Assembly: GCF_006345805.1 (NCBI RefSeq)
Contig: NC_043013.1
Span: forward strand, 21,328,001-21,392,000
Direction of reading: 5' to 3'
DNA length: 64,000 nucleotides
Origin: Octopus sinensis
Taxonomy: Eukaryota
The notes beneath the pieces are model-generated. The model was given only the letters and a program-made list of their open reading frames with translations. It ran no database searches and was not told the DNA's origin. Position 1 is the stretch's first letter; the number at the start of each line of letters is the position of its first letter. Shown in pieces: positions 5,129-63,130 of this stretch. Both the position numbers and the translations under genes were made by a program.

Positions 5129-5513
5129 GGTAGGAGCGCTCCGTCGGTTACGACGACGAGGGTTCCGGTTGATCCGATCAACGGAACAGCCTGCTCGTGA
5201 AATTAACGTGTAAGTGACTGAGCACTCCACAGACACGTGTACCCTTAACATAGTTCTCGGGGATATTCAGCGTGATACAGAGAGTGACAAGGCCGGCCCT
5301 TTGAAATACAGGTACAACAGAAACAGGAAGTAAGCGTGAGAGAAAGTTGTGGTGAAAGAGTACAGCAGGGATCACCACCATCCCTGCCGGAGCCTCGTGG
5401 AGCTTTTAGGTGTTTTCGCTCAATAAACACTCACAACGCCCGGTCTGGGAATCGAAACCGCGATCCTACGACCGCGAGTCCGCTGCCCTAACCACTGGGC
5501 CATTGCGCCTCCA
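5129..5513 (-). mobile_element. tRNA-derived SINE family A1 (OR1-like), full length
   Basis: A box TGGCCCAGTGG and B box GTTTCGATTCC; 13-bp TSD CAGATCCAGTATA at 5116-5128 and 5514-5526; matches the copy at 54754. Confidence 0.92.
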
Positions 5514-6878
5514 CAGATCCAGTATAACGATGCAGTAAACCTTTCAGGATTATATAATTCTGCTTCAGTCCACATTCAGAAGTGTGTGTGTGTATGTGTG
5601 TGTGTGTGTGTGTGTGTCTGTGTGTGTGTGTGTGTACGTATGATTGGTATATCATGTGAGAAAGAGAGATAAAGGAATATATCTCTGCTATTTCATCCAA
5701 TTCGTTTTATCGATAAATATAGATAAAACTACTTGGAAGCTCGAAAAACCAGACAATGCTCCCATCGCTGCTCGTCACTCCCGACTCTAATATTGTAATG
5801 AACGTCAGGAAGTTGGTTTTATGTCAAGATGATGCATACAGGCTTAAAAGGGTGGGTGCCTTATTATTAATATTTTCCATGGAAAGCTGCTACAAAACGG
5901 AAATATCAGCACTCGGTGAACATTTAAAAAATATTGGATACCAAGATTATCCTAAGAACAGTTTAACTTAGACATTGGACTAAATCTAAACTCAGATAAA
6001 ACAACATCTCTAGTTGCAGATAAACTGTGAAATTCTACACACTCACAAGAATCTCGTAGATGATAGAGAGAAGGACCCCTAAACTGTGCTCCCATCACCT
6101 TCAACGGTGTTGCGCTTATTGTAACAACGCATTAACAAAAATAGCTTCAATGCGGAACTAGTTACAAGGAACATTTGCAAAGGGTATCAGAGCCAGAAGG
6201 AGAAAAATAAATTGATTGAACGAATGTTACCACCAATAACTAGGAATTTCTTTTGTGTAAATAACTTATTTTCCAACCCCACAAATAGCGCAAAATATTC
6301 ACCACCACTAACCTGAAAGAGAGCCTTTTTGGATGGGTAGCATAGATACCTTACTCTTACTCCACAAGAAAAGGCATCATTTCTTTGCTGATGCATTGAT
6401 ATAAGAAATAATTATTCGCTCAGTAAATATTCCGTTATCTGTGAAAAAATAGGGGCGACCTTTTAGTCGAGAATCGCAGAAAACCACAAAATAATGATTT
6501 CTTTTAGAGGATTCTGACTTAGAATATGTACGATGCGCAGCATACAACAACAACTAAACTGGACTGTTATAGAAATAGCGAGTAGAAAAACGAGGTGCCT
6601 TTTGACAAGTCACCTGAGGTGACACGTCAGCACCTTTGATACACCGCAACTGTTTGTACGGCATCAAACCTGCGATGTTCCGGTCCAGGATAGATCGAAA
6701 CGATATTATTGAATGATCTTGTGAATTCCATTGACTTTCTCTCGTTTTTATAAATTCTACGAATACAAAAGGAATCTCTGAAGTAAACCCAGTGACATGA
6801 ACCTTCATGATGTTGATGACATCAGGTAGCCGAATACTGTAAACGGGCTTTAAATGACATATCACAATGTTTATGTCC

Positions 6879-11200: not shown

Positions 11201-12046
11201 TATATATCAGATATCGACGTCTGGTGGCGTATATGTGTGTGCCTTGCATTTACTCACACATACATGTACGCATTTATGTCGACAAACGCAAGATTGGCAT
11301 TCCAATAAAAATATATGTTGGCCCTTTTTTCACGTCATCTGGTTCCTTCTTTGACATTTTTTTGAAAAACAAGAAAGAGAAACAATACGATACAAACAAA
11401 CATTGAGAAACTGTTCTCGATTCATATTACTAAAATATTTCAGAATTTACATTTCGCATTCTAAATGAATTCTCTTAACCATTTTATAATTTCAGTCGAT
11501 TGCAGGCATCTCCCGCCTTTTAACAATAGCCCTACATGATATTCAGTCAGTTGGAAGTAACAGAAGATGGAACAGAAATACAATTTCTGGTTTTATTTGC
11601 TGTTTTCAATGAAACTTTTTTTGCATTTTGCTCTTCGACGAAAAAAAAAACATTTTGAAAAACTTGCCATTCTTTGAATTATTTATTCTATTTTCATTGG
11701 ATATTAATATTAATGTTGATGTTTTCGTTGGTAAGGAGGTGAGTTGGTAGAGGGGTGAGTTGGTGGAGAGGTGTGTTGGGGGAGAGGTGCGTTGGTGGGT
11801 GGTAGTGTTGCTGGTGGAGGCAGTGTGCTGGTGCTGGTGCTGGTGGTGTTGTAATCTGTATCCTTATTGTGCAGTTAGTCAAGTTGTTAACGCGTTTGTT
11901 TTCGTCAGTGTGTATTATGAGATATCTTTCAAGGTACTGCGCAGAGAACTTTTACACACACACTCACACACACACACACTCACTCACACACACACATACA
12001 CACATATATATATATTTAAAAAAGGAGATGTGGAACACGAGTTGTG

Positions 12047-12358
12047 ATATATAAAAAAGGAAATGAAGAAAATGCTGACAAAATAATTTAAGTAAGGGAG
12101 AGTGTATTTAATTAGGTGAAAGTTCTTTTTACCGGTTGCGCATTTGTTATGCTTATCAAAGATATTTTTTTAAGAGAGATAGAGTCCCTTTCTGATAGAT
12201 TTTTTTGAGAAAAAAATCTATCAGAAAGGAACTCTATCTCTCTTTAAAAAATATCTTTTGATAAGCATAACAAATGCGCAACCGGTAAAAAGAACTTTCA
12301 CCTAATTAAATACACTCTCCCTTACTTAAATTATTTTGTCAGCATTTTCTTCATTTTC

Positions 12359-12368
<10 letters not shown>
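12047..12368. repeat. ~320-bp near-perfect palindrome (arms ~160 bp, 3-nt loop GAG at 12207-12209)
   Basis: AAATGAAGAAAATGCTGAC...CTGATAGATTTTTTT-GAG-AAAAAAATCTATCAG...GTCAGCATTTTCTTCATTT; one clear substitution plus homopolymer-length differences. Confidence 0.95.
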
Positions 12369-12389
<21 letters not shown>

Positions 12390-12391
12390 GA

Positions 12392-12435
<44 letters not shown>

Positions 12436-12543
12436 TATGTGTTGTGTGTGTGTGTGTGTGTGGTGTGTGTGTATGTTTATATGTATGTATGTATGTGCGA
12501 GCGTGTATGAATGTTGTGTGGGATGTGTGTGTGCCTGTGTGTA

Positions 12544-19662: not shown

Positions 19663-19817
19663 TTTATTCTTGTCATTTATATTAAATCAGAAATCCTATG
19701 TGATTGCCATGGAAAAAAATTGCAGAACTGTATAATGACATCGGTCTTTCTTTTTGTATTGCTTTATCTATTATGTAGCATAAACTGCATCTTGGTGAAA
19801 TGTATCTTTGACATGTA

Positions 19818-21038
19818 CGAGGGCCGGTCAATAAGTAATGCCCCTGACCCACATCCCATAGCAGTAGAGCAACGAAACTTGGCACAGTTATTAGTCTTTT
19901 TCTACATAGGAACCACCCAGAGTTATACATTTCTCCCATCGTTTGATGCGGCTCTGGAGACCGTTTTTGTAGAAGAACCCAGCTTGGTCCTCCAACCTCA
20001 ACGTGACTTCAGAAATCAAGGCTGCATCATCTGGGAAACGCTTTCCTTTCAAAAACAACTTCATGATTGGAAGAGGTGAAAATCAGAGGTGCAAGGTCAG
20101 GAAAGTAGGGGGGATGGGGAGGAGTTCATAGCCATACGCCTGTGCTTCTGATCTGGCGACAAGCGAGTTGTGGACCGGAGCGTTGTCCTACAGGAGGAAG
20201 ATGCCTTTGCTGATCTTGCCCCGCCTCTTGATTTTGATAACTTCTCTTAATTTCCTCAAAAGTGAAGCATAATAGGCTCCTGCAATTGTGGTACCCTTTG
20301 CCAGGAAATCTGTCATCACTACTCCGTCCTGGTCCCAGAAGACTGTGAGCATGACCTTGCCAGCCGAGGGCTGCACCCTTGCCTTCTTTGGAGGGGGTGA
20401 GTCACGGTGCTTCCACTGCATTGACTGGGCTTTGGTCTCTGGATCATCGTGATGGACCCAGGTTTCATCCTGTGTAATCAGTCTTTTGAAAAATTTTGAC
20501 TCATCTTCTTGGCACATCTCCAAATTCACCCTCGAGCACTCGACACGTTCTTGCTTCTGGAAAGGCGTGAGCAACCTGGGAATCCATCTGGCAGACACCT
20601 TTTGCATATGCAAATGGTAATGAATGATAGTTTCCACAGACCCGGTACTAATCTTGACCTCATGGGCTATTTGGCGAATAATTATGCTTCGATCTTCCAA
20701 AATGGCAGCCTCAACTTGACGGACAGATGCCTCCTCAATAGCAGAAGGGGGCGACCAGATCTGGGAGCTGTTTCCACAGAGTTCCGACCATGTTTGAATT
20801 CACGATGCCAGCGTTTTACAAGGTCATATGATGGGGCATCATCACCATAAGTTACTTTCATTTCATCAAAAGTCTCCCGTGGTGTGCGTCCTTTCAAATA
20901 CAAAAACCGGATCACTGCTCGACACTCAACAGGCTCCATTTCACACTTGACTCGGTTCAAACACCTGTAAATCAGAAACCATAATTAGATCAAACAACTT
21001 CAAGTGGGTCAGAGGCATTACTTATTGAACTTCCCTCG
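19818..21038 (-). mobile_element. Full-length mariner element (DD34D)
   Basis: TA|CGAGGGCCGGTCAATAAGTAATGCC ... GGCATTACTTATTGAACTTCCCTCG|TA; 1221 bp, with transposase remnants between the TIRs. Confidence 0.95.
19891..20939 (-). pseudogene. Mariner transposase pseudogene
   Basis: MEPVECRAVIRFLYLKG...APRSGRP (HTH), WIPRLL, LITQDETWVHH, SAGKVMLTVFWDQDG, a stop replacing Q before DNAPVH, HPPYFPDLAPSDF; frameshift near 20730. Confidence 0.92.
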
Positions 21039-27483: not shown

Positions 27484-28174
27484 GTGTTGTTGTTGTATCA
27501 AATTCACAGGCACTTCAGGTTTCAACTAACGGTTTATTCAGTCAGTGGCCGATGAAGCTGGTACCGTGTTTTCCGCCACTTCAGTCAACGTAACATAAAG
27601 TGTAAATATGTAGTTGCACATTTAAGCATCGTCACAATCTTTCCAAATTCTGCTGCTACATTTTACAAGGAACCTTTTGGTCCTTCAAACACATCGCAGT
27701 GTATTAGTTGACCTACCTTTTTGGCTGCAAACTTTGGTCTGCAAAATTCAACTCGTATACTGGAAATACGGTCAGCGTATTGAAGTCTTAGTCAATGCAA
27801 GCTTTACAGTAAAGAATGTCTACTCTTGGTATTGAGACACTACATTAGTAAATATTTCTTTTTTATTCTTAAGCTAGCGTTAATGTAATAACTTCAGTTC
27901 AACATATATTATATTATTATGTATTGGCATATGTATAAAGTATACATAATATGATATATTTCGTTAAAGACATTTTCTCGCTAAACTAAACTGTATATTC
28001 ATAACATATATGCAAAAGATTCTGGTATTTCATGCTGCGTTAGAAAATAGCATGAAGCTCACATTTTTACAAATAGATATTAGTAAGGATTTGTTATTTT
28101 CTCTCGATAGTTGAAGACAGGAATTTTTTTTTTCAAATATGTATTCAGTATTCGTGGAAATAGCTACAACAATA

Positions 28175-29073
28175 CGAGGTCTGATCAATAAGTATCTGGA
28201 CTGTCGCCATAGTAACGAAGCTTCTATGGCACGTAGAGCAAAGCTGCTTGGCACAGATTGACCTTGACCTCTGCTGTGCCTGTGTACTAAGTTTTAACGT
28301 TCTAACTTACTTCCGCTTCCTACAGCAGTGCTTCGAAGTAACGTATGTAACGTGTGATCGTCACATTGACCATGACAGAGAAAGGTGTCATGGCGATACC
28401 TGCTGAGAGGCCAACACAAAGTTGCAGAAAGTGTATGGAGAGGAGTGTATGAGCCGCACACAAGTGTACGAGTGGTTCAGACGTTTCCACGATGGCCGAG
28501 AAAATGTCGATATTGACGAACTTTCTAGGAAACCTGCAACCTACAGAACTCAGAAAAACATTTCGGATATGCTTGCAGCTGTGGGGGGAAATCGTAGAAT
28601 CACCATATGTGAGTAATCAAAGGTTGTGCAGATTAATTGCAGTTCAGTTCAGTCCACTATCACTGAAGATTTGGGTATGAGACGCGTCTCTGCCAAGCTT
28701 GTGCCAAAACTGCTTTCAGCTGACCAAAAAAGATACTCGGGTTTCAGATGCACAAGATCTCTTTGATTGAGTTGAGAACAATGAAATCTTTTTGAAAACT
28801 TTGCGTAGGCCTCTGAGCAGGTATCGCCAAGCTTTTGGCAAAATTTGATGCAGATTCTCTGCTGAACTTTCTCTGTCATGGTCAATGCGACGAACACACG
28901 CTACACACGTTACTTCTAAGCACTTCTGTAAAAAGAGGAAGTGAGCTAGAACTTTAAAATTTATTGCACAAGCAGAGCAGAGTTTAAGGTCAAGCTGTGC
29001 TAAGCGCTTTTAATCTGCGTGCTTTAGCTTCGTTACTATGGCTACAGCCTGGATACTTATTGATCAGACCATG
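28175..29073. mobile_element. Mariner-derived MITE formed from two inverted 5' ends
   Basis: TA|CGAGGTCTGATCAATAAGTATC ... GATACTTATTGATCAGACCATG|TA. The + arm encodes an N-terminal transposase (CMSRTQVYEWFRRFHDGRENV); the - arm encodes MTEKVQQRICIKFCQKLGDTCSEAY; junction at ~28797. Confidence 0.85.
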
Positions 29074-29159
29074 TATACATACATAGAGTGGGAGTAGCAT
29101 ATCGTTGTCTTCTCCGAGTTTTTGTGTCTAGAGTACAAAAGATTATTTTCCTATACTTG

Positions 29160-39228: not shown

Positions 39229-39328
39229 NNNNNNNNNNNNNNNNNNNNNNNNNNNNNNNNNNNNNNNNNNNNNNNNNNNNNNNNNNNNNNNNNNNNNNNN
39301 NNNNNNNNNNNNNNNNNNNNNNNNNNNN
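39229..39328. other. Assembly gap (100 N)
   Basis: Exactly 100 N between (TA)n and (GAA)n; the flanks may not be contiguous. Confidence 0.99.
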
Positions 39329-44571: not shown

Positions 44572-45538
44572 TGTGCTTCAACATTCCAGTGGAGGCCTCC
44601 TTGCTGGACTCCTTGTCTTGTAAACCTATCGGTAATTGTAAAGTGTGGTAGTTTCTCCTTGTTGTCTTCGACATTTTTTTCTGAATATACGATGCATAAT
44701 GATATATAAGCCTAATACACTTATTGATGAACTATACAATGCATATCAATAAAATCATCTTGACACGTAGAAGCATAAAATTCCATTACAGAAACCGAAT
44801 GGGTAGAAACGTAAGCTGGGGGGTTAGGGCGGAGAATTAAGTTGTATCAGAAATGACAATAATTGAACGCATAATAGAAATGAGCAGCAATGAAAAGCTA
44901 TAAGTCTATCAGCTTCTGTTAACTCCTGGAGCTGATATCACACCGGGACTGTGGCTGCATAATATTATTATATAATCATTCTGTAATTACACTATATGAT
45001 TATTGTAATTTCATTATATCATAACATAATTATCTAACCGGAAGCACGTCGCTGTTGTTACTTCATGGAGATAACCTATCAATTTTAATTGTTCTATGCT
45101 GTTTCATTACTTGGTTAAATACTTGTTTTATTTCATAATTTATGTGAATGCATATTAATACCGCGTGTTGCGTTCATAACTTGTGTGTGGTGTGGGTGTG
45201 TCTGTATGTGTACCTGTGGGCGTGGGTGTGTCCGTATGTGCACTTTTGTGCATCTTTACCTGCATCAATATGCACCTGCCTGAACCCGCTGAAGTTTTGT
45301 AAGTATAATATCAACTTAAATTCGAAACTGAAACAACTTTACATAATCAATTCAAAGCCTACACACAAACTAACACACACGCGCGCGCGCGCGCACACGC
45401 GCGCGCGCACACACACGCACGCACACACACACATACACACACATACACTCAAACACACAAACAAACATACATACCCATGCATATATATATACATTCATAA
45501 ACTTTTATATATATATATATAATATATATATATATATA

Positions 45539-45902
45539 TGATGGCTGTCCCCTCGTTATCGAGTATGGCCATTGCACGAAGCTTAACTGTTATTGGTGCT
45601 GTGATCGAATGTGACTTTTTAGCCCAGCTAAAGTTCTACAATATCTTGTACAGAAGTGGCAGCTAAAACCTTTACCAGTAATAGCCGGCTGTAGTTGTAA
45701 CTGGGCTTCATGTACCTTTGCATGTCGTTTAAGTCCTCCTGCCGAATTACACTCTCTTCCACAAGCCTGACAGATATGATTAGTATGGTATGTTACACCA
45801 CCACCAGAGGCCAGGTAGTCACTCATCTGTCTCGCTTTATGACTACGAAGATGACTCTTGAGTCCAGCTTTACTGAGGCAGGATCTTGCACAGACCCTGC
45901 AC
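45539..45902 (-). mobile_element. Triple C2H2 zinc-finger segment with LINE-like 3' tail (probably RTE 3' end), copy 1
   Basis: CRVCARSCLSKAGLKSHLRSH, CQACGRECNSAGGLKRHAKVH, CHFCTRYCRTLAGLKSHIRSQH, then a stop, a short UTR with hairpin CTCG-ATAA-CGAG, and (TA)n. Confidence 0.7.
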
Positions 45903-45991
45903 ATACATACATACATACATACATACATACATACATACACACCCATGCATATATATATATGCATGCATAAACTTTTATATATATATATATA

Positions 45992-46355
45992 TGATGGCTG
46001 TCCCCTCGTTATCGAGTATGGCCATTGCACGAAGCTTAACTGTTATTGGTGCTGTAATCGAATGTGACTTTTTAGCCCAGCCAAAGATCTACAATGTCTT
46101 GTACAGAATTGGCAGCTAAAACATTTACCGGTAATAGCCGGCTGTAGTTGTAAATGGGCTTCATGTAACTTTGCATGTCGTTTAAGTCCTCCTGCCAAAT
46201 TACACTCTCTTCCACAAGCCTGACAGATATGATTAGTATGGTATGTTACACCACCACCAGTGGCCAGGTTGTCACTCATATGTCTCGCTTTATGACTACG
46301 AAGATGACTCTTGAGTCCAGCTTTACTGAGGCAGGGTCTTGCACAGACACTGCAC
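45992..46355 (-). mobile_element. Triple C2H2 zinc-finger segment with LINE-like 3' tail, copy 2 (tandem duplicate)
   Basis: Same layout, about 13 amino-acid differences, all Zn ligands kept. Confidence 0.7.
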
Positions 46356-46640
46356 ATACATACATACATACATACATACATACATACATACATACATACA
46401 TACATACATACATACATACATGCATACATACATACATACATACATACATACATACATACATACATACATACATACATACATACATACATACATACATACA
46501 TACATACATACATACATACATACATACATACATACATACATACATACATACATACATACATACATGCATGCATGCATACATACATACATACATACATACA
46601 TACATACATACATACATACATACATACATACATACATACG
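46356..46640. repeat. (ATAC)n microsatellite
   Basis: Direct reading. Confidence 0.97.
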
Positions 46641-46663
46641 TATAAGTACATCTATACACACAT

Positions 46664-54697: not shown

Positions 54698-54753
54698 TAT
54701 ATAAATATATGCATATATATAAATTCATGTGTGTGTGTGTGTGTGTGTGTGCG

Positions 54754-55124
54754 TGGAGGCGCAATGGCTCAGTGGTTAGGGCAGCGGCCTCGCGGTCGTA
54801 GGATCGCGGTTTCGATTCCCAGACCGGGCGTTGTGAAGGTTTATTGAGCAAAAAGCTCCACGAGGCTCCGGAAGTGGGTGGTGGCGAATCCTGCTGTACT
54901 CTTTCACCACAAATTTTCTCACTTGTTCTTCCTGTTTCTGTTGTACCTGTATTTCAAAGGGCCAGCCTTGACACACTTTCTGTGACGCTGAATCTCCCCT
55001 GAGAACTACGTTAAGGGTACACGTGTCTGTGGGGTGCTCAGCCACTTGCACGTTAATTTCACCAGCAGGCTGTTCCGTTGAACGGATCAACTGGAACCCT
55101 CGTCGTCGTAACCGAGGGAGCGCC
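54754..55124 (+). mobile_element. SINE A1, full length
   Basis: Matches 5129-5513 end to end. Confidence 0.92.
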
Positions 55125-58229: not shown

Positions 58230-58727
58230 TTGGTGTTTGGTTGGTACTAAGTATAGTGTTAGGTAGCTGTTTTGTATGCTTTTTGTTGGATGTCTAGTAC
58301 TATGTTCGTTTCACGTTTACCATGTCGTTTGCTTGCTGTTTACTAGGCAGTTTGTTTGGTGTTTATTATCGTGTTTGGTTGATGTTTAGTATGATATTTG
58401 GTTGGTGTTTAGTATGGTGTTTTGGTTGGTGTTTAGCATGAAATTTCGTTCGTTTAGTATGCTGTTTGCGTGATGTTTACTGCAGTTTGGTTGGTGTTCA
58501 GGATGTTGTTAGGTCGATGTTTAGTAAGGTATCTGGCTAACATTTACTATGGCGTTAAGTTTAGGTTCAGTCTGGCGTGTGGTTGTTGGTGGTTTCATCT
58601 GTGTTTAGTATGGTCTTCTGTTAGTGTTTTGTATGATGCTTGGTTGGCGTTTAGTTGACCTTTAGTAGGGTGCTTGGCTGGTATTTAGTATGGTGTTTAG
58701 AATGGCATTTGATTTGTGTTTAGTATC
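58230..58727 (+). repeat. Degenerate ~23-bp minisatellite (TGTTTAGTATGGTGTTTGGTTGG), resuming at 59129-~59185
   Basis: Recurring TGTTTAGTAT and TTTGGTTGG at ~23-bp spacing. Confidence 0.75.
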
Positions 58728-59128
58728 TATTTCTTTACTACCCACAAGGGGCTAAACACAGAGGGAACAAACAAGGACAGACAAAGGTATTAAGTCGATT
58801 ACATCGACCCCAGTGCGTAACTGGTACTTATTTCATCGACCCCGAAAGGATGAAAGGCAAAGTCGACCTCGGCAGAATCTGAACTCAGAACGTAACGGCA
58901 GACGAAATACCTATTTCTTTACTACCCAACAAGGGACTAAACACAGAGGGAACAAACAAGGACAGACAAACGGATTAAGTCGATTACATCGACCCCAGTG
59001 CGTAACTGGTACTTAATTTATCGACCCCGAAAGGATGAAAGGCAAAGTCGACCTCGGCGGAATCTGAACTCAGAACGTAACGGCAGACGAAATACGGCTA
59101 CGCATTTCGCCCGGCGTGCTAACGTTTC
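58728..59128 (-). mobile_element. Head-to-tail SINE C1 dimer, both units 5'-truncated, one shared TSD
   Basis: 11-bp TSD TGTTTAGTATC at 58717-58727 and 59129-59139; unit junction near 58911. Confidence 0.9.
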
Positions 59129-59583
59129 TGTTTAGTATCGTGTCTATTTGGAGTTTACTATGGTATTATTTCGATGTCTACTGTGACTGCCGCTAGAGAT
59201 TTCATCTTCATATATATTCATAACCAATATTTATTACTGAACAAGAAACAGTCGTAAATTTCAGTTACACTCGCAACACACTGTTTGTTAGATATTTATA
59301 GCGAAATCACAAGTGTTCAGTACGTTAGTCACAGACAAGCAGCAAAGATCACAGAACCCAGAAACGTTTTTCTTGGGTAGGATCGGTATCATAGCTACTT
59401 GACCACACTCCTATATGTACGTGTGTGTGTATGTGTGTGTGTGTGTGTGTGAGAGTTCTTGGATGCAAGCTTGAGTGTATGTTTGAGTGCAACTTATGTG
59501 TGAGTCTCTATTAAAAGAGATACGTGATTGTATCACTGCTTCCGATTGAATAATGTGTGCATTCCTGGTCTTCTAATCTTGAT

Positions 59584-59964: not shown

Positions 59965-60036
59965 CTGTATGTTTATTTCGTGTGTGTTTACATAGGTATG
60001 CTTATATGTATATATATATGTTTGCATATCTCTCTT

Positions 60037-60101
<65 letters not shown>

Positions 60102-60173
60102 GAGAGAGAGATGCAAACATATATATATACATATAAGCATACCTATGTAAAGACACACGAAATAAACATACAG
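59965..60173. repeat. ~210-bp palindrome centred on (TA)n
   Basis: CTGTATGTTTATTTCGTGTG..TTTACATAGGTATGCTTATATG...(CT)n(TA)n(GA)n...CATATAAGCATACCTATGTAAA..CACACGAAATAAACATACAG. Confidence 0.93.
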
Positions 60174-60319
60174 GGATCACCACCACCCACTGCCGGAGCA
60201 TCGTGGAGCTTTAGGTGTTTTTCGCTCAATAAACACTCACAACGCCCGGTCTGGGAATCGAAACCGCGATCCTACAACCGCGAGTCCACGCCCTAACCAC
60301 TGGTCCATTGCACCTCCAC
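60171..60319 (-). mobile_element. SINE family A, 5' half only (3' truncated)
   Basis: CAGGGATCACC...GGAATCGAAACCGCG...CCTAACCACTGGTCCATTGCACCTCC; no tail. Confidence 0.9.
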
Positions 60320-61431
60320 ACACACACATATATATATATAGCTCAACAGTATATATGTATGTATATATGAATCTATGTATGTACGTATTTATGTAAAGCT
60401 AACACGAACTTTACAATAAATTTGACGTTACTGTTTCTATTGAGTCCTCTCATCAGCAAATGTACGGCTGTTATTCTGCAACTTCCTTTAAAATTATAAG
60501 CCAAAATTAAATGTTAATGTGTGTGGGGGGTTGTGTGTGTGTGTGGATTCGTGTGTTTATTTTCTAATTATTCCATTTGTCAATATCTACTCACATATAT
60601 ATATATTTACTTGAATAACCGTGCGTAAGCATATTGACGTACGTTCATGTCTTTCATTGTGCGTGTAGATAACCACGACCTCTTTACATGTACGTTTGTA
60701 CAATTCTGTGTTTTGATTCGTTTTGTAAACGTAGTTATTAAAACTGAACACAGTATTGACACAAATGACACGAAGGAGGGGAAACATCTCTAAAATTACA
60801 CAAACGATGCTATAAAATGTTGATTTTTAAGAATGTGATCCTTTCTCTGGATACGACAAGATTCCTTTCTTATTTTTTTCCTTTTTTCTCATTCTACAAT
60901 TGCAGTAATTAGTTCTCGTGCGATCAATGCGTTCAATGGATTGAGGAAACGTGTATTTAAATGGAAGCGATTCCTCTACACAGCACGAGCCTTTGTCTGG
61001 TTGAGGTTTTGGCAGCACATCATTCAACTTTACAGCTTGCAGAGCGCTTTAAAACGGAACTTCATCGAAATTGGAATTAGCAACGATTCATCAATACCAA
61101 TGATTTCGCTGAACACTGATCGTAAAATTCTCATCACCATGTTTATAGGAAATAGTTGTTTAGATAGGCCGCTTAAATAATTGCACTTCGACCGTTTATT
61201 GATTTTGTCGTTGTTGTTGTTGTTATTTTGATTTGTTAGCATTTTTCTTTCACTTTTAAACACCTTCAATAGTCGTTTGTCTTGTGCTGCTTCACAATTA
61301 TATCCAGTACATGACTAGGAACAAAGAATCCATGCAATGATTTCCATTCGGAAATAAAGTGCATTGTGGGAAGCTGTTTATGCTTTTTTTTTTTTTTTAC
61401 AAATAACTGTCTTCAAATCCATACAATATAT

Positions 61432-61939
61432 CCTTTTATCTTATTATTTCACGTTAATAATACACAGATTAATATTAATTAATATCCAGGTGAGATCCAT
61501 TTCCCAGTGGATGCAGTGGGACCAATGTAGAATTGAGAGATATTTTGTTAGACTGCTTTACAGATTAGATTTCAATTGTTGTGGATCTAGCACAGGCGGT
61601 AACAGGTTCCAGCAAACAAACATGTCGTGTTCTTATTATATACATTCTCTTACAATATTATTTTCAAATTTTGGTACAAGTCCAGCAATTTTGGGGGATG
61701 GGGTAAGTCGATTTCATCGACCCCAGTGCTCAACTGGTACTTATTTTATTAACTTCTTTTGAAGTTTGTTACCGTCTGTGCTAGATCCACAACAATTAAA
61801 ATCTAAAATGTATAGCAGTCGAACAAAATATCTCTCAATTCCACATTGGTCCCACTGCATCCACTGGGAAATGGATCTCACATAGATATTAATTAATATT
61901 AATCTGTGTATTACTAATGTGAAATAATAAGATGAAAGG
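61432..61939. repeat. Inverted repeat, arms 61432-61604 and 61767-61939 (~173 bp, roughly 90% identical by eye)
   Basis: GATCCATTTCCCAGTGGATGCAGTGGGACCAATG versus CATTGGTCCCACTGCATCCACTGGGAAATGGATC, etc. Confidence 0.93.
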
Positions 61940-62042
61940 CGAAGTCGACCTCGGTGGAATTTGAACTCAGAACGTGAAGATGGATTAAATGCCGCTAAGC
62001 ATTTTGACCGGCGTGCTAACGATACTGCCAGCCCGCCGCCTT
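61652..62042 (-). mobile_element. SINE C2 split by the right arm of the inverted repeat
   Basis: 3' part 61652-61750 (tail and core), 5' part 61931-62042 (core start and head). Confidence 0.85.
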
Positions 62043-62478
62043 ACATTCTCTTAAAATATTAAAGCTAAACTGCAATGACAATGATTCAAAACAATCCCTA
62101 CGACTATTTAAATATAAGCCAGGTTTTAATCAGATAAATCAGATTTTTATGACGTGAGTAATCATGTGTTGCTTTGTCAACTGTTACGTAGTCACGTGCT
62201 TTAAACCGTAACCATAGACACAACACTACAATGTATTTATACCATCTGTAAATTAGGTTCAGTCGTATAAACTTATATAAGTTGACATTCATAATCTTTG
62301 GTAAGTACTTTATAAGCTCTTTTAAATGTATAATCTCTTAAATATAACTTTAGACTGTCAAAAATTTTGTAGAAAACGGGTTAAAAGATTTACGTATAAA
62401 TTATTGAGTTAGATAAAGTAATAAATGGTATTGTTCATGGTGAATAAAACATTATTTTGCATATACATACTTGCAAAT

Positions 62479-62521
<43 letters not shown>

Positions 62522-62534
62522 TGTGTGTGCACGC

Positions 62535-62680
62535 ACATGTGTGTACATATGTCATGGGTATGACTTTAAACGGACTTGGTATGGAAATTCCAGTCTTTTC
62601 AGGAGTATGGAACCATCTCATTGCCACTATTGTTCCTAGTTCCAGTCTAACCCGAAGTAGTAGCACCTGTAATATCCCCT
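62535..62680 (-). mobile_element. Dispersed repeat family E fragment
   Basis: Homologous to 37995-38112. Confidence 0.5.
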
Positions 62681-63130
62681 TCTATGGGTTAATTAGCATA
62701 AGAACCACTGGCAGCGAGGAACCTCTAGTTCTCGCTAGAACTTCCTCCCAGGAGAAAGTAAACTTGTATAAAATAAATAAAAAATTAAATAAACTCGAAT
62801 GCAGATGGTTTCTGGTCGTTTGACAATCTCTTGATCCACTGGCTGATTGCCCTGAAAACAAATTCATGCACTGGAATTTCTTAGCCTCTCAAGAGTTTTG
62901 TACGGACTTACTGAGTTTAGAAAGTTGTCTCATTCGGTCACGAGTTGACTGCCACCACACCGCATATTTATACATGCGATATATATATATATATTATTTT
63001 ATGTAGAAAAATACAAACTGGGACAAGAACGTAAAACATTAAGAAGACGATACAAAAAACACGGACGGGACATTCGAAGCCTTCAATCTTCAGTCAAGAA
63101 CCGGATCATCGTAGCAATTTCGGCTGATTA

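What the first reader, a model, noticed from the sequence alone, without database searches (positions are those of the whole stretch)
61432..62042. SINE interrupted by an inverted copy of its own flanking DNA
Seen: a SINE C2 (-) is split into 61652-61750 and 61931-62042 by ~175 bp that is the reverse complement of unique DNA at 61432-61604, just upstream of the insertion site. The distal junction has ~9-nt microhomology (genomic CCTTTTATC versus SINE CCTTTCATC), and ~10 SINE bases are skipped. Inference: the nascent cDNA left the RNA, folded back to copy flanking DNA, then returned to the SINE RNA (RNA to DNA to RNA switching); a later FoSTeS/MMBIR event is the alternative. With 59965-60319 and the dimer at 58728, this points to a recurrent, possibly undescribed mechanism that builds long dsRNA-forming inverted repeats next to SINEs.
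Basis: partly seen in the sequence, partly recalled or inferred. Interest (0 to 1): 0.72.

Follow-up and report, generated by a model that had tools for sequence, protein, structure and literature searches.

The report
Octopus SINE holding inverted flank copy
A short mobile element (SINE) in an octopus genome really is interrupted by a backwards copy of 173 bases of the DNA just beside it, most likely because a DNA-copying enzyme briefly switched templates; this kind of error is known, and one locus cannot show whether it happened while the SINE was inserting or later.

Summary
Arms 61432-61604 and 61767-61939 are 173 nt, have 12 mismatches and no indels, and score 259 bits; shuffled sequence scores at most 39. 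The right arm lies inside a minus-strand tRNA-type SINE bounded by a 20-nt target-site duplication (19/20). The SINE lacks 12 consensus bases at the break. A 17-nt hairpin-forming filler sits at one junction and an 8/9 microhomology (CCTTTTATC/CCTTTCATC) at the other.

The structure shows that a growing plus-strand 3' end left the SINE, copied the upstream flank backwards, and returned. Timing is unresolved. The arms differ by about 3.5% per lineage, against about 6% private divergence for the SINE (p=0.16).

I favour a post-insertion replication or repair template switch (about 0.55). The layout is the known four-point "3-2-1-4" type, and SINE-free inverted duplications occur in the same 98 kb of octopus DNA. 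Snap-back during insertion followed by return to the SINE RNA remains possible (about 0.28).

The "recurrent, undescribed" claim is weak. Locus 59965-60320 is a microsatellite-centred palindrome abutting a 3'-truncated SINE. The dimer is an RNA-to-RNA jump. cDNA snap-back and LINE-associated inverted duplications are already published. No orthologue or genome-wide copy number could be obtained.

The parts
61432..61604 (+). Left arm: unique flanking DNA that served as template (source copy).
   Evidence: It is 173 nt and 93.1% complementary to 61767-61939. No other copy exists in the window or in the 34-kb O. vulgaris locus L001. Homology ends exactly at the two junctions of the insert inside the SINE, so copying ran from left arm to right arm.
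61432..61440 (+). Flank half of the return microhomology, CCTTTTATC.
   Evidence: It matches SINE CCTTTCATC at 8/9. P is about 1e-4 for a fixed position.
61605..61640 (+). Unique flank between the source arm and the target-site duplication; part of the 162-nt loop.
   Evidence: No homology to the insert beyond 61604.
61641..61660 (+). Left target-site duplication, TACATTCTCTTACAATATTA.
   Evidence: Family D1 in the repeat finder; 19/20 identical to 62042-62061.
61661..61749 (-). SINE 3' part (body and tail); consensus resumes at ATAAAATAAGTACC.
   Evidence: Alignment to seven other copies in the window.
61750..61766 (+). 17-nt filler TAACTTCTTTTGAAGTT at the departure junction; self-complementary (AACTTC-TTTT-GAAGTT).
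   Evidence: No other source in the window at up to 3 mismatches. It folds as its own small hairpin in the predicted structure. Its SINE-proximal bases may be decayed SINE sequence (GTTAAT versus GTCGAT).
61767..61939 (-). Right arm: inverted copy of 61432-61604, inside the SINE.
   Evidence: Twelve mismatches are spread evenly along the arm, with no indels.
61931..62041 (-). SINE 5' part (tRNA-like head), complete to its 5' end; its last 9 nt (CCTTTCATC) overlap the arm.
   Evidence: Alignment to other copies.
62042..62061 (+). Right target-site duplication, TACATTCTCTTAAAATATTA.

Best explanation
**What it is.** This is a local template-switch (fold-back) inverted duplication inside an already inserted SINE.

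**How it most likely formed.**
1. A plus-strand 3' end was being extended rightwards through the SINE. It could have been a leading strand at a replication fork or the resected 3' tail of a break.
2. It disengaged near 61749.
3. It added about 17 nt that include a small snap-back hairpin.
4. It re-annealed about 150 nt behind itself, on single-stranded plus-strand DNA (the lagging-strand template or its own resected strand).
5. It copied 61604 down to 61432.
6. It returned to its original template when its new end (complement of CC TTT[T/C] ATC) paired with the identical SINE 9-mer lying 12 nt beyond the departure point.

**Net result.** Twelve SINE bases were replaced by 181 bases, and a 173-bp inverted repeat with a 162-nt loop was created.

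**Shown and inferred.** The templated inverted copy, its direction, the junctions and the intact target-site duplication are shown. The enzyme and the timing (after insertion) are inferred.

**Function.** Probably none. If transcribed, the locus would fold into a very stable 173-bp double-stranded RNA.
For: - The geometry is confirmed. It equals the four-point template-switch type '3-2-1-4' (mirror '1-4-3-2'), which creates an inverted repeat and made up 31% of high-confidence human-chimp events.
- A long return microhomology of 9 nt at 8/9 (P about 1e-4), together with an untemplated or hairpin filler at the other junction, is typical of replicative or microhomology-mediated repair switches.
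- Comparable local inverted duplications without any SINE occur in the same small sample of octopus DNA.
  - Window 11953-12473: unique arms about 98% identical.
  - L001 5766-5813/5948-5995: 48 nt, 100% identical, 135-nt spacer.
- With interspersed and local repeats covering about 21% of the window, one such event landing in a SINE is not surprising.
- The arms look somewhat younger than the SINE. They differ by 12/173 pairwise, about 3.5% per lineage. The SINE differs from a 14-copy consensus at 15/157 sites, about 10 of them private.
- The 93% identity and the 162-nt spacer argue against an assembly fold-back artefact. The only N gap is at 39229-39328.
Against: - The age difference is not significant (p=0.16; non-CpG sites p=0.27). 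The consensus is crude, and gene conversion between the arms could make them look younger.
- The target-site duplication (1/20) is as diverged as the arms (p=1).
- The copied flank is the one next to the SINE's 3' end, and the polarity is exactly that of a first-strand cDNA. A post-insertion event would match this only half the time.
- The copy starts only 37 nt from the target-site duplication.
- At 173 nt it is longer than the short template-switch events the cited papers describe.
- The same SINE family shows a reverse-transcriptase template jump in this window, the dimer at 58728-59129.
Confidence: 0.55

Rival explanations
1. **Retrotransposition-coupled snap-back.**
1. During target-primed reverse transcription, the cDNA (plus strand, primed at 61660) copied the 3' 89 nt of the SINE RNA.
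2. It then left the RNA and folded back onto plus-strand flank that had been exposed by second-strand nicking and 5' resection.
3. It was extended 173 nt on DNA by the LINE reverse transcriptase or a host polymerase.
4. It re-annealed to the still-tethered SINE RNA at CCUUUCAUC.
5. It finished the RNA to its 5' end, and normal joining produced the 20-nt target-site duplication.
For: - The target-site duplication is intact and the SINE is otherwise complete.
- The source is the flank on the primer side, and the polarity is that of the cDNA strand.
- The source begins 37 nt from the second-strand nick position.
- cDNA snap-back onto the cDNA itself, or 'less frequently nearby rDNA', is a recognised 5'-junction class for R2-type proteins in human cells.
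- LINE-1 insertions with inverted duplication of nearby genomic DNA, formed by resection and self-annealing with the target-site duplication preserved, have been reported.
- A template jump in the same SINE family lies 2.5 kb away.
- Divergence of the arms and of the target-site duplication is compatible with one event.
Against: - It needs a long chain of steps while the RNA and the reciprocal end stay intact.
- The published snap-back and inverted-duplication cases I read sit at the junction of the insertion. None resumes on the RNA.
- A 9-nt microhomology plus a 17-nt filler is more typical of DNA repair or replication switching than of reverse-transcriptase jumps (my own knowledge).
- The arms are, if anything, younger than the SINE.
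- SINE-free inverted duplications show that a generic process exists.
- Among roughly 30 SINE copies of the several families in about 98 kb (an approximate count), only this one has the structure.
Confidence: 0.28
2. The 173-nt arm is a dispersed repeat. One copy lies in the flank, and a second inserted independently, in the opposite orientation, into the SINE.
For: - Copy number in the whole genome could not be measured.
- A T15 run at 61384-61398, just left of the left arm, could be the tail of a minus-strand retroposon.
- Only about 98 kb of octopus DNA was available, so a family with fewer than about 10^4 copies cannot be excluded.
Against: - No third copy exists in the window or in L001.
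- The insert has no target-site duplication of its own. The SINE lost 12 nt at the site instead.
- One boundary coincides with a 9-nt match to the SINE.
- No target-site duplication was found for a retroposon ending in the T15 run.
- Two copies 93% identical lying 162 nt apart would be a coincidence.
Confidence: 0.05
3. Assembly or sequencing artefact, such as a chimeric fold-back read.
For: The window holds two other zero-spacer palindromes, at 12207 and 60066, that look like typical fold-back artefacts.
Against: The arms are 7% diverged, are separated by a 162-nt spacer, and are embedded precisely in a SINE with microhomology. The nearest gap is 22 kb away.
Confidence: 0.03

Closest known systems
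Short-range template-switch mutations: Ripley quasi-palindrome model and the Loytynoja & Goldman four-point model, type 3-2-1-4 / 1-4-3-2 (PMC5453318)
   Same: [quoted passage not shown] The polymerase returns close to where it left. A new hairpin-forming inverted repeat results.
   Different: The copied fragment is 173 nt, whereas the paper is about short events. There is an extra 17-nt filler, so more than two switches occurred. The event lies inside a SINE.
FoSTeS / MMBIR and fold-back templated insertions at double-strand breaks (e.g. PMC11724301, seen as an abstract only)
   Same: Microhomology-guided switching, several successive switches, filler sequence, and inverted templated insertion from nearby DNA.
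   Different: Those classes are described either at kilobase-to-megabase scale or as very short insertions (mostly about 5-34 bp in yeast). This event is intermediate in size.
cDNA snap-back synthesis during target-primed reverse transcription (R2-protein 'PRINT' insertions, PMC11371274)
   Same: The cDNA 3' end primes DNA-templated synthesis on the cDNA or on nearby target DNA and produces antisense sequence.
   Different: There the snap-back ends the insertion at its 5' junction. Here 111 nt of further SINE follow, up to its 5' end, with a normal target-site duplication. That would require a return to the RNA.
LINE-1 insertions with inversion or inverted duplication of flanking DNA (Mendez-Dorantes et al., bioRxiv 10.1101/2024.12.14.628481)
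   Same: Inverted duplication of genomic DNA next to the integration site, explained by 5' resection, self-annealing and priming. The target-site duplication is preserved.
   Different: Those are mostly at the reciprocal end and lie outside the retro-copied sequence. They involve human LINE-1 rather than an octopus SINE.
LINE-1 twin priming (5' inversion)
   Same: An inverted segment inside a retrotransposed insertion flanked by a target-site duplication.
   Different: In twin priming the inverted segment is the element's own 5' part. Here both SINE parts keep the same orientation and the inverted segment is flanking DNA.

Membership tests
Template-switch mutation (four-point model, type 3-2-1-4) | The inserted fragment is the reverse complement of nearby sequence on the same chromosome. 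| tested here: met
   173 nt at 93.1%, with the source 162 nt upstream.
Template-switch mutation (four-point model, type 3-2-1-4) | Switch points ordered 3-2-1-4: the source lies upstream of the departure point, and the return point lies just beyond departure. | tested here: met
   Source 61604->61432, departure about 61749, return 12 consensus nt further along the SINE.
Template-switch mutation (four-point model, type 3-2-1-4) | The ancestral state (here an uninterrupted SINE) is seen in an outgroup or another allele. | not testable with these tools
   No orthologous or allelic sequence could be retrieved.
FoSTeS/MMBIR-type event | Microhomology at the junctions. | tested here: inconclusive
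   The return junction has 8/9 nt (P about 1e-4). The departure junction has a 17-nt filler and no clear microhomology.
Retrotransposition-coupled snap-back / inverted duplication | Hallmarks of target-primed reverse transcription around the whole composite. | tested here: met
   A 20-nt target-site duplication (19/20) flanks 61661-62041. A post-insertion event inside the SINE would leave the same hallmark.
Retrotransposition-coupled snap-back / inverted duplication | The inverted copy has the polarity of an extension of the first-strand cDNA and derives from DNA at the integration site. | tested here: met
   The SINE is on the minus strand, so the cDNA is the plus strand. The right arm, read on the plus strand, is the complement of the plus-strand flank upstream of the priming site.
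Retrotransposition-coupled snap-back / inverted duplication | The snap-back product lies at the 5' junction of the insertion, as in the published cases. | tested here: not met
   It is internal, and 111 nt of SINE head follow it.
Retrotransposition-coupled snap-back / inverted duplication | The inverted copy is the same age as the insertion. | tested here: inconclusive
   Arms 3.5% per lineage; SINE about 6.4% private or 9.6% total from consensus; target-site duplication 1/20. Fisher p = 0.16, 0.009 and 1.0.
Twin-priming 5' inversion | The 5' part of the element is inverted relative to its 3' part. | tested here: not met
   Both SINE parts are on the minus strand and colinear with intact copies.
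Nested insertion of a dispersed repeat | Further copies elsewhere, and insertion hallmarks of its own (target-site duplication, or terminal repeats or a tail). | tested here: not met
   No third copy in 64 kb plus 34 kb. No target-site duplication of its own, and 12 nt of SINE are deleted. Genome-wide copy number was not testable.
tRNA-derived SINE | Dispersed copies with individual target-site duplications and a tRNA-like 5' region. | tested here: inconclusive
   There are 8 copies in the window and 7 or more in O. vulgaris L001, and target-site duplications were seen. ARAGORN and Rfam do not call a tRNA in the heads. The B-box-like GAGTTCAAATTCC was read by eye only.

The most novel reading that the evidence does not exclude
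In octopods, the LINE machinery that mobilises this SINE family may, at a measurable rate, let the nascent cDNA snap back onto resected flanking DNA and then resume on the same RNA. That would write long, perfect inverted repeats of unique host sequence into new SINE insertions. It would be a retrotransposition-coupled source of long double-stranded RNA substrates in a lineage known for heavy A-to-I editing.
Probability: 0.12. Interest if true: 0.7.

Novelty: new member of a known kind. Interest (0 to 1): 0.33.

Why it matters
**If post-insertion.** The locus is a clean and unusually long example of a template-switch mutation creating a 173-bp hairpin from scratch. It illustrates how long double-stranded RNA structures arise in a cephalopod genome, but it is not new in kind.

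**If retrotransposition-coupled.** It would be natural, germline evidence that a non-LTR reverse-transcription complex can go from RNA to DNA and back to RNA within one insertion. That extends the snap-back and inverted-duplication outcomes so far seen in engineered human-cell systems and in cancers.

**Limits.** One locus cannot decide between these readings. The value of the finding is as a seed for a genome-wide, orientation-aware scan.

Tried and rejected
**Routes to outside sequence that failed.**
- The exact-protein look-up of the 132-aa ORF spanning the left arm and SINE tail (61364-61762) found nothing on record.
- A homology search with the same ORF gave no hit, not even to the SINE part, so the protein collection is blind to this DNA and the result says nothing about copy number.
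- A scan of metagenome contigs for a 27-mer conserved in both arms gave 0 hits. The positive control with the SINE core also gave 0 hits, so the negative is uninformative.
- I tried to collect more octopus DNA through transposable-element proteins.
  - A zinc-finger ORF led to Octopus vulgaris locus L001. This was useful for SINE copies and as a second sample, but it is not orthologous.
  - Mariner hits on long ENA contigs (L002, L003) carry no SINE1 and are another organism. This route was abandoned.
- A search for host-gene exons, to reach an orthologous intron and to learn the direction of transcription, found no convincing coding ORF. The only GC-rich ORFs are the mariner. I did not submit a six-frame pseudo-protein query, because its size would swamp the word index.

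**Negative sequence tests.**
- No source for the 17-nt filler exists in the window at up to 3 mismatches.
- No target-site duplication was found for a hypothetical retroposon ending in the T15 run at 61384-61398.
- ARAGORN and Rfam found nothing at the locus. The sub-threshold microRNA-like hits on the 59988-60149 palindrome are low-complexity hairpin matches.

**Ideas considered and rejected.**
- The left arm is the copy and the right arm the original. Rejected because homology ends exactly at both junctions of the insert inside the SINE.
- A SINE inserted into a pre-existing inverted repeat. Rejected because SINE sequence flanks the right arm on both sides.
- Twin priming. Rejected because the two SINE parts have the same orientation.

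Full report
**1. Is it there?**

Yes. The region 61000-62600 was read directly. The repeat finder reports one strong inverted pair, 61432-61604 against 61767-61939. It is 173 nt and 93% complementary, with 162 nt between the arms. blastn gives the same pair at 259 bits and finds no third copy of the arm in the window. A base-by-base alignment shows 12 mismatches, no gaps, and an abrupt end of homology on both sides. In 100 composition-preserving shuffles of 60800-62800, the best inverted match reached 26 +/- 4 bits, with a maximum of 39. The only assembly gap in the window is at 39229-39328. Arms 7% diverged with a 162-nt spacer do not look like a fold-back read artefact.

**2. The SINE and its junctions**

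The sequence around the right arm belongs to a family with seven other copies in the window: 8139, 17278, 19663, 43525, 43763, 58893 and 59130. They are 82-86% identical to this copy.
- The element lies on the minus strand.
- Its 3' part is 61661-61749 and its 5' head is 61931-62041.
- A 20-nt direct repeat, TACATTCTCTTA[C/A]AATATTA (61641-61660 and 62042-62061, 19/20), brackets the whole 381-bp composite.

Intact copies read ...GCCTTTCATC|CTTTCGGGGTCG|ATAAAATAAGTACC.... In the composite the 12 middle bases are absent, or 8 if GTTAAT is a decayed GTCGAT. They are replaced by 181 bp (61750-61930).
- The first 17 nt are a filler, TAACTTCTTTTGAAGTT. It is self-complementary (AACTTC-TTTT-GAAGTT), has no other source in the window at up to 3 mismatches, and forms its own small hairpin in the predicted fold.
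- The remaining 164 nt are arm.
- The arm runs 9 nt further into the SINE. The flank reads CCTTTTATC and the SINE reads CCTTTCATC, which is the return microhomology. The chance of 8/9 or better at a fixed position is about 1e-4.
- With 7% arm divergence, the single mismatch may well be a later substitution in an originally perfect 9-mer.

**3. Direction of copying**

Homology between the two arms stops exactly at the two junctions of the insert within the SINE. The flank is therefore the source and the SINE-internal arm is the copy. The reverse would need a coincidence at both ends.

The SINE is on the minus strand, so the plus strand is the strand a first-strand cDNA would occupy. It is also simply a nascent plus strand growing rightwards. 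Read on that strand, the order is as follows.
1. The SINE 3' part.
2. The filler.
3. The complement of plus-strand 61604 down to 61432.
4. The SINE 5' part.

A growing plus-strand 3' end therefore left its template, copied plus-strand DNA 150-320 nt behind itself in the backward direction, and came back 12 nt beyond where it had left. This much follows from the sequence alone.

**4. Organism and outside data**

A zinc-finger ORF in the window has its best database hit in Octopus vulgaris at 72% identity. The 34-kb O. vulgaris locus obtained through that hit (L001) carries the same SINE family at 80-93% identity but is not orthologous. The window is therefore octopod DNA.

Every route to the rest of this genome failed.
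- Exact-protein look-up of the ORF across the arm.
- A homology search with that ORF, which did not even find the SINE part.
- Metagenome scans for the arm and for the SINE core as a positive control. Both gave 0 hits, so the negative is uninformative.
- Mariner-based retrieval, which returned contigs of another organism lacking the SINE.

No exon could be recognised, so the direction of any host transcript is unknown. Orthologues, allele states and genome-wide copy number of the arm, which are the decisive tests, could not be run.

**5.

| Sequence | Differences | Rate |
|---|---|---|
| Arms, pairwise | 12/173 | about 3.5% per lineage |
| Arms, outside CpG | 10/165 | about 3.0% per lineage |
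| SINE against a 14-copy consensus (window plus L001) | 15/157 | 9.6% |
| SINE, private differences only | about 10/157 | 6.4% |
| SINE, private non-CpG | about 7/131 | 5.3% |
| Target-site duplication | 1/20 | 5% pairwise |

Five of the 15 SINE differences lie at columns that are polymorphic among copies and so probably mark subfamilies.

Fisher tests give the following.
- Arms per lineage against private SINE differences: p=0.16.
- Non-CpG sites: p=0.27.
- Arms against all SINE differences: p=0.009.
- Target-site duplication against arms: p=1.0.

Equal age is therefore not rejected, and "arms much younger than the SINE" is not shown. The point estimate puts the arms at roughly half to two-thirds of the SINE's age. 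Three caveats apply: the consensus is crude, the SINE may mutate faster than the flank, and gene conversion between the arms could make them look younger.

**6. Is it recurrent and tied to SINEs?**

I scanned the window and L001, about 98 kb in total, for local inverted matches. Removing microsatellites, pairs of dispersed repeats and a mariner-type element with 213-bp terminal repeats (28172-29076) leaves four local inverted duplications.
- **(a) The present locus.**
- **(b) 59965-60173.** A zero-spacer palindrome centred on (CT)n(AT)n(AG)n. Its unique arms differ at 2 of about 63 nt. Its right arm joins a SINE of a different family through the 3-nt overlap CAG. That SINE copy (60171-60320, minus strand) stops at about position 155 of about 380 when compared with full-length copies at 5136-5515 and 54753-55123. 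A 3'-truncated SINE is not a product of ordinary target-primed reverse transcription. The simplest reading is a break with (AT)n hairpin-primed fold-back synthesis and microhomology joining. Capture of an internal stretch of SINE RNA at a break is an alternative.
- **(c) 11953-12473.** A palindrome with about 145-nt unique arms, about 98% identical, centred on T7GAGA7. It has no SINE.
- **(d) L001 5766-5813/5948-5995.** A perfect 48-nt inverted repeat with a 135-nt spacer next to (AT)n. It has no SINE.

Two of the four touch a SINE. Repeats cover about 21% of the window. I did not measure the share covered by SINE families alone and estimate it at about 10%. On those figures the enrichment is not significant (my rough binomial estimate is p about 0.05-0.18).

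The dimer at 58728-59129 is a different kind of event. Unit 1 is 5'-truncated, and unit 2 begins at the SINE's 3' terminus. A single target-site duplication, GTTTAGTATC, surrounds both units. This is a classic jump of the reverse transcriptase from one RNA to the 3' end of another. It shows that this family's enzyme switches templates, but it builds no inverted repeat.

**7. What is already known**
- Type "3-2-1-4" of the four-point template-switch model copies an upstream fragment in reverse complement, returns close to the departure point and creates an inverted repeat. With its mirror type it made up 31% of high-confidence human-chimp events.
- On the retrotransposition side, R2-protein-mediated insertions in human cells show a "snap-back" class. 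In it the cDNA 3' end primes DNA synthesis on the cDNA or, less often, on nearby target DNA.
[quoted passage not shown] These are explained by 5' resection and self-annealing, with the target-site duplication preserved.

Neither reading is therefore a new kind of mechanism. What would be new under the coupled reading is the return to the RNA and completion of the element. I found no description of that in these papers.

**8. Weighing the two readings**

For a post-insertion switch:
- It is an exact match to a known and common class of event.
- It has a long microhomology plus a filler.
- SINE-free analogues lie nearby.
- It needs fewer steps.
- The arms are, if anything, younger than the SINE.

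For the coupled model:
- The copied flank is the one at the SINE's 3' end, with cDNA polarity. This has even odds by chance.
- The source lies 37 nt from the second-strand nick.
- Apart from the 12 nt missing at the break, the SINE is complete and its target-site duplication is intact.
- Snap-back is a documented behaviour.
- A template jump in the same family lies 2.5 kb away.

I also made a rough base-rate argument.
- This sample has about one or two spacer-type inverted duplications per 98 kb and roughly 30 SINE copies.
- On those figures the coupled route becomes the likelier one only if more than about 1 in 400 SINE insertions carries such a structure.
- The published systems suggest flank inverted duplications are around that frequency or rarer. 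This is my impression; neither passage gave a rate.
- Cases with return to the RNA are unreported.

My estimates are about 0.55 for the post-insertion switch, 0.28 for retrotransposition-coupled snap-back, 0.05 for a dispersed repeat, 0.03 for an artefact, and the remainder for other explanations.

**9. Consequence**

As RNA, 61420-61950 folds into one long hairpin. The minimum free energy is -295 kcal/mol, against -109 +/- 6 for shuffled sequence (z = -29). If the locus is transcribed it is a 173-bp double-stranded RNA and a plausible editing or small-RNA substrate. Transcription was not tested, and I infer no selected function.

**10. Verdict**

The mechanistic core, a fold-back templated copy with microhomology return, is supported. 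Its assignment to reverse transcription is possible but not favoured. The claim of a recurrent, undescribed, SINE-linked mechanism is not supported by the other loci cited. The finding is of modest interest, mainly as a seed for an orientation-aware, genome-wide scan.

Noticed in passing
window 58718-59139: Head-to-tail dimer of the same SINE family on the minus strand. Unit 1 is 5'-truncated at ...GAAATAC, and unit 2 begins at the SINE 3' terminus (CTATTTCTTTACTACCC). One target-site duplication, GTTTAGTATC (58718-27 / 59130-39), surrounds both units, which are 95.7% identical. It looks like a reverse-transcriptase jump from one RNA to the 3' end of a second.
   Followed up: partly
window 59965-60320: Zero-spacer palindrome centred on (CT)n(AT)n(AG)n, with unique arms about 97% identical. 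A 3-nt overlap (CAG) joins it to a SINE of another family that is cut off at about position 155 of about 380. Full-length copies lie at 5136-5515, with target-site duplication TATACTGGATCTG, and at 54753-55123.
   Followed up: partly
window 11953-12473: Large palindrome with about 145-nt unique arms (12062-12206 / 12207-12352), about 98% identical and centred on TTTTTTTGAGAAAAAAA. The outer parts are mirror-image microsatellites. No SINE is involved. It is either a very recent fold-back duplication or an assembly artefact.
   Followed up: partly
L001 5766-5995 (Octopus vulgaris OX597815.1): Perfect 48-nt inverted repeat with a 135-nt spacer directly next to an (AT)n tract. No SINE is involved. 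It is a second example of a spacer-type local inverted duplication in octopus DNA.
   Followed up: partly
window 19816-20992 and L002 9615-10794: A mariner-type transposon copy is 92.4% identical over 1181 nt to an ENA contig (ERZ25067889). That contig has 40% GC and none of the octopus SINEs. A mantis-shrimp protein is 86% identical to the transposase. This may reflect horizontal spread of the mariner lineage.
   Followed up: no
window 28172-29076: A mariner-like non-autonomous element with terminal inverted repeats about 213 bp long and 82% identical, and remnants of a helix-turn-helix coding region.
   Followed up: no
window 45430-46651: Tandem duplication (about 89% identity) carrying two ORFs with three C2H2 zinc-finger motifs, fused to a long (TGTA/CATA)-type microsatellite. 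The best hit is an unnamed Octopus vulgaris protein at 72% identity.
   Followed up: no
window 61750-62041: Strand-biased changes in the split SINE. All four decayed CpGs of the head are CG->CA on the sense strand. The filler bases next to the SINE tail (GAAGTTAAT against consensus GGGGTCGAT) differ only by three G->A and one C->T. This could hint at deamination of a single-stranded minus-sense DNA, but the numbers are too small to test.
   Followed up: partly
window 61384-61398: A run of 15 T lies just left of the source arm. No target-site duplication was found for a minus-strand retroposon ending there, so its origin is unexplained.
   Followed up: partly
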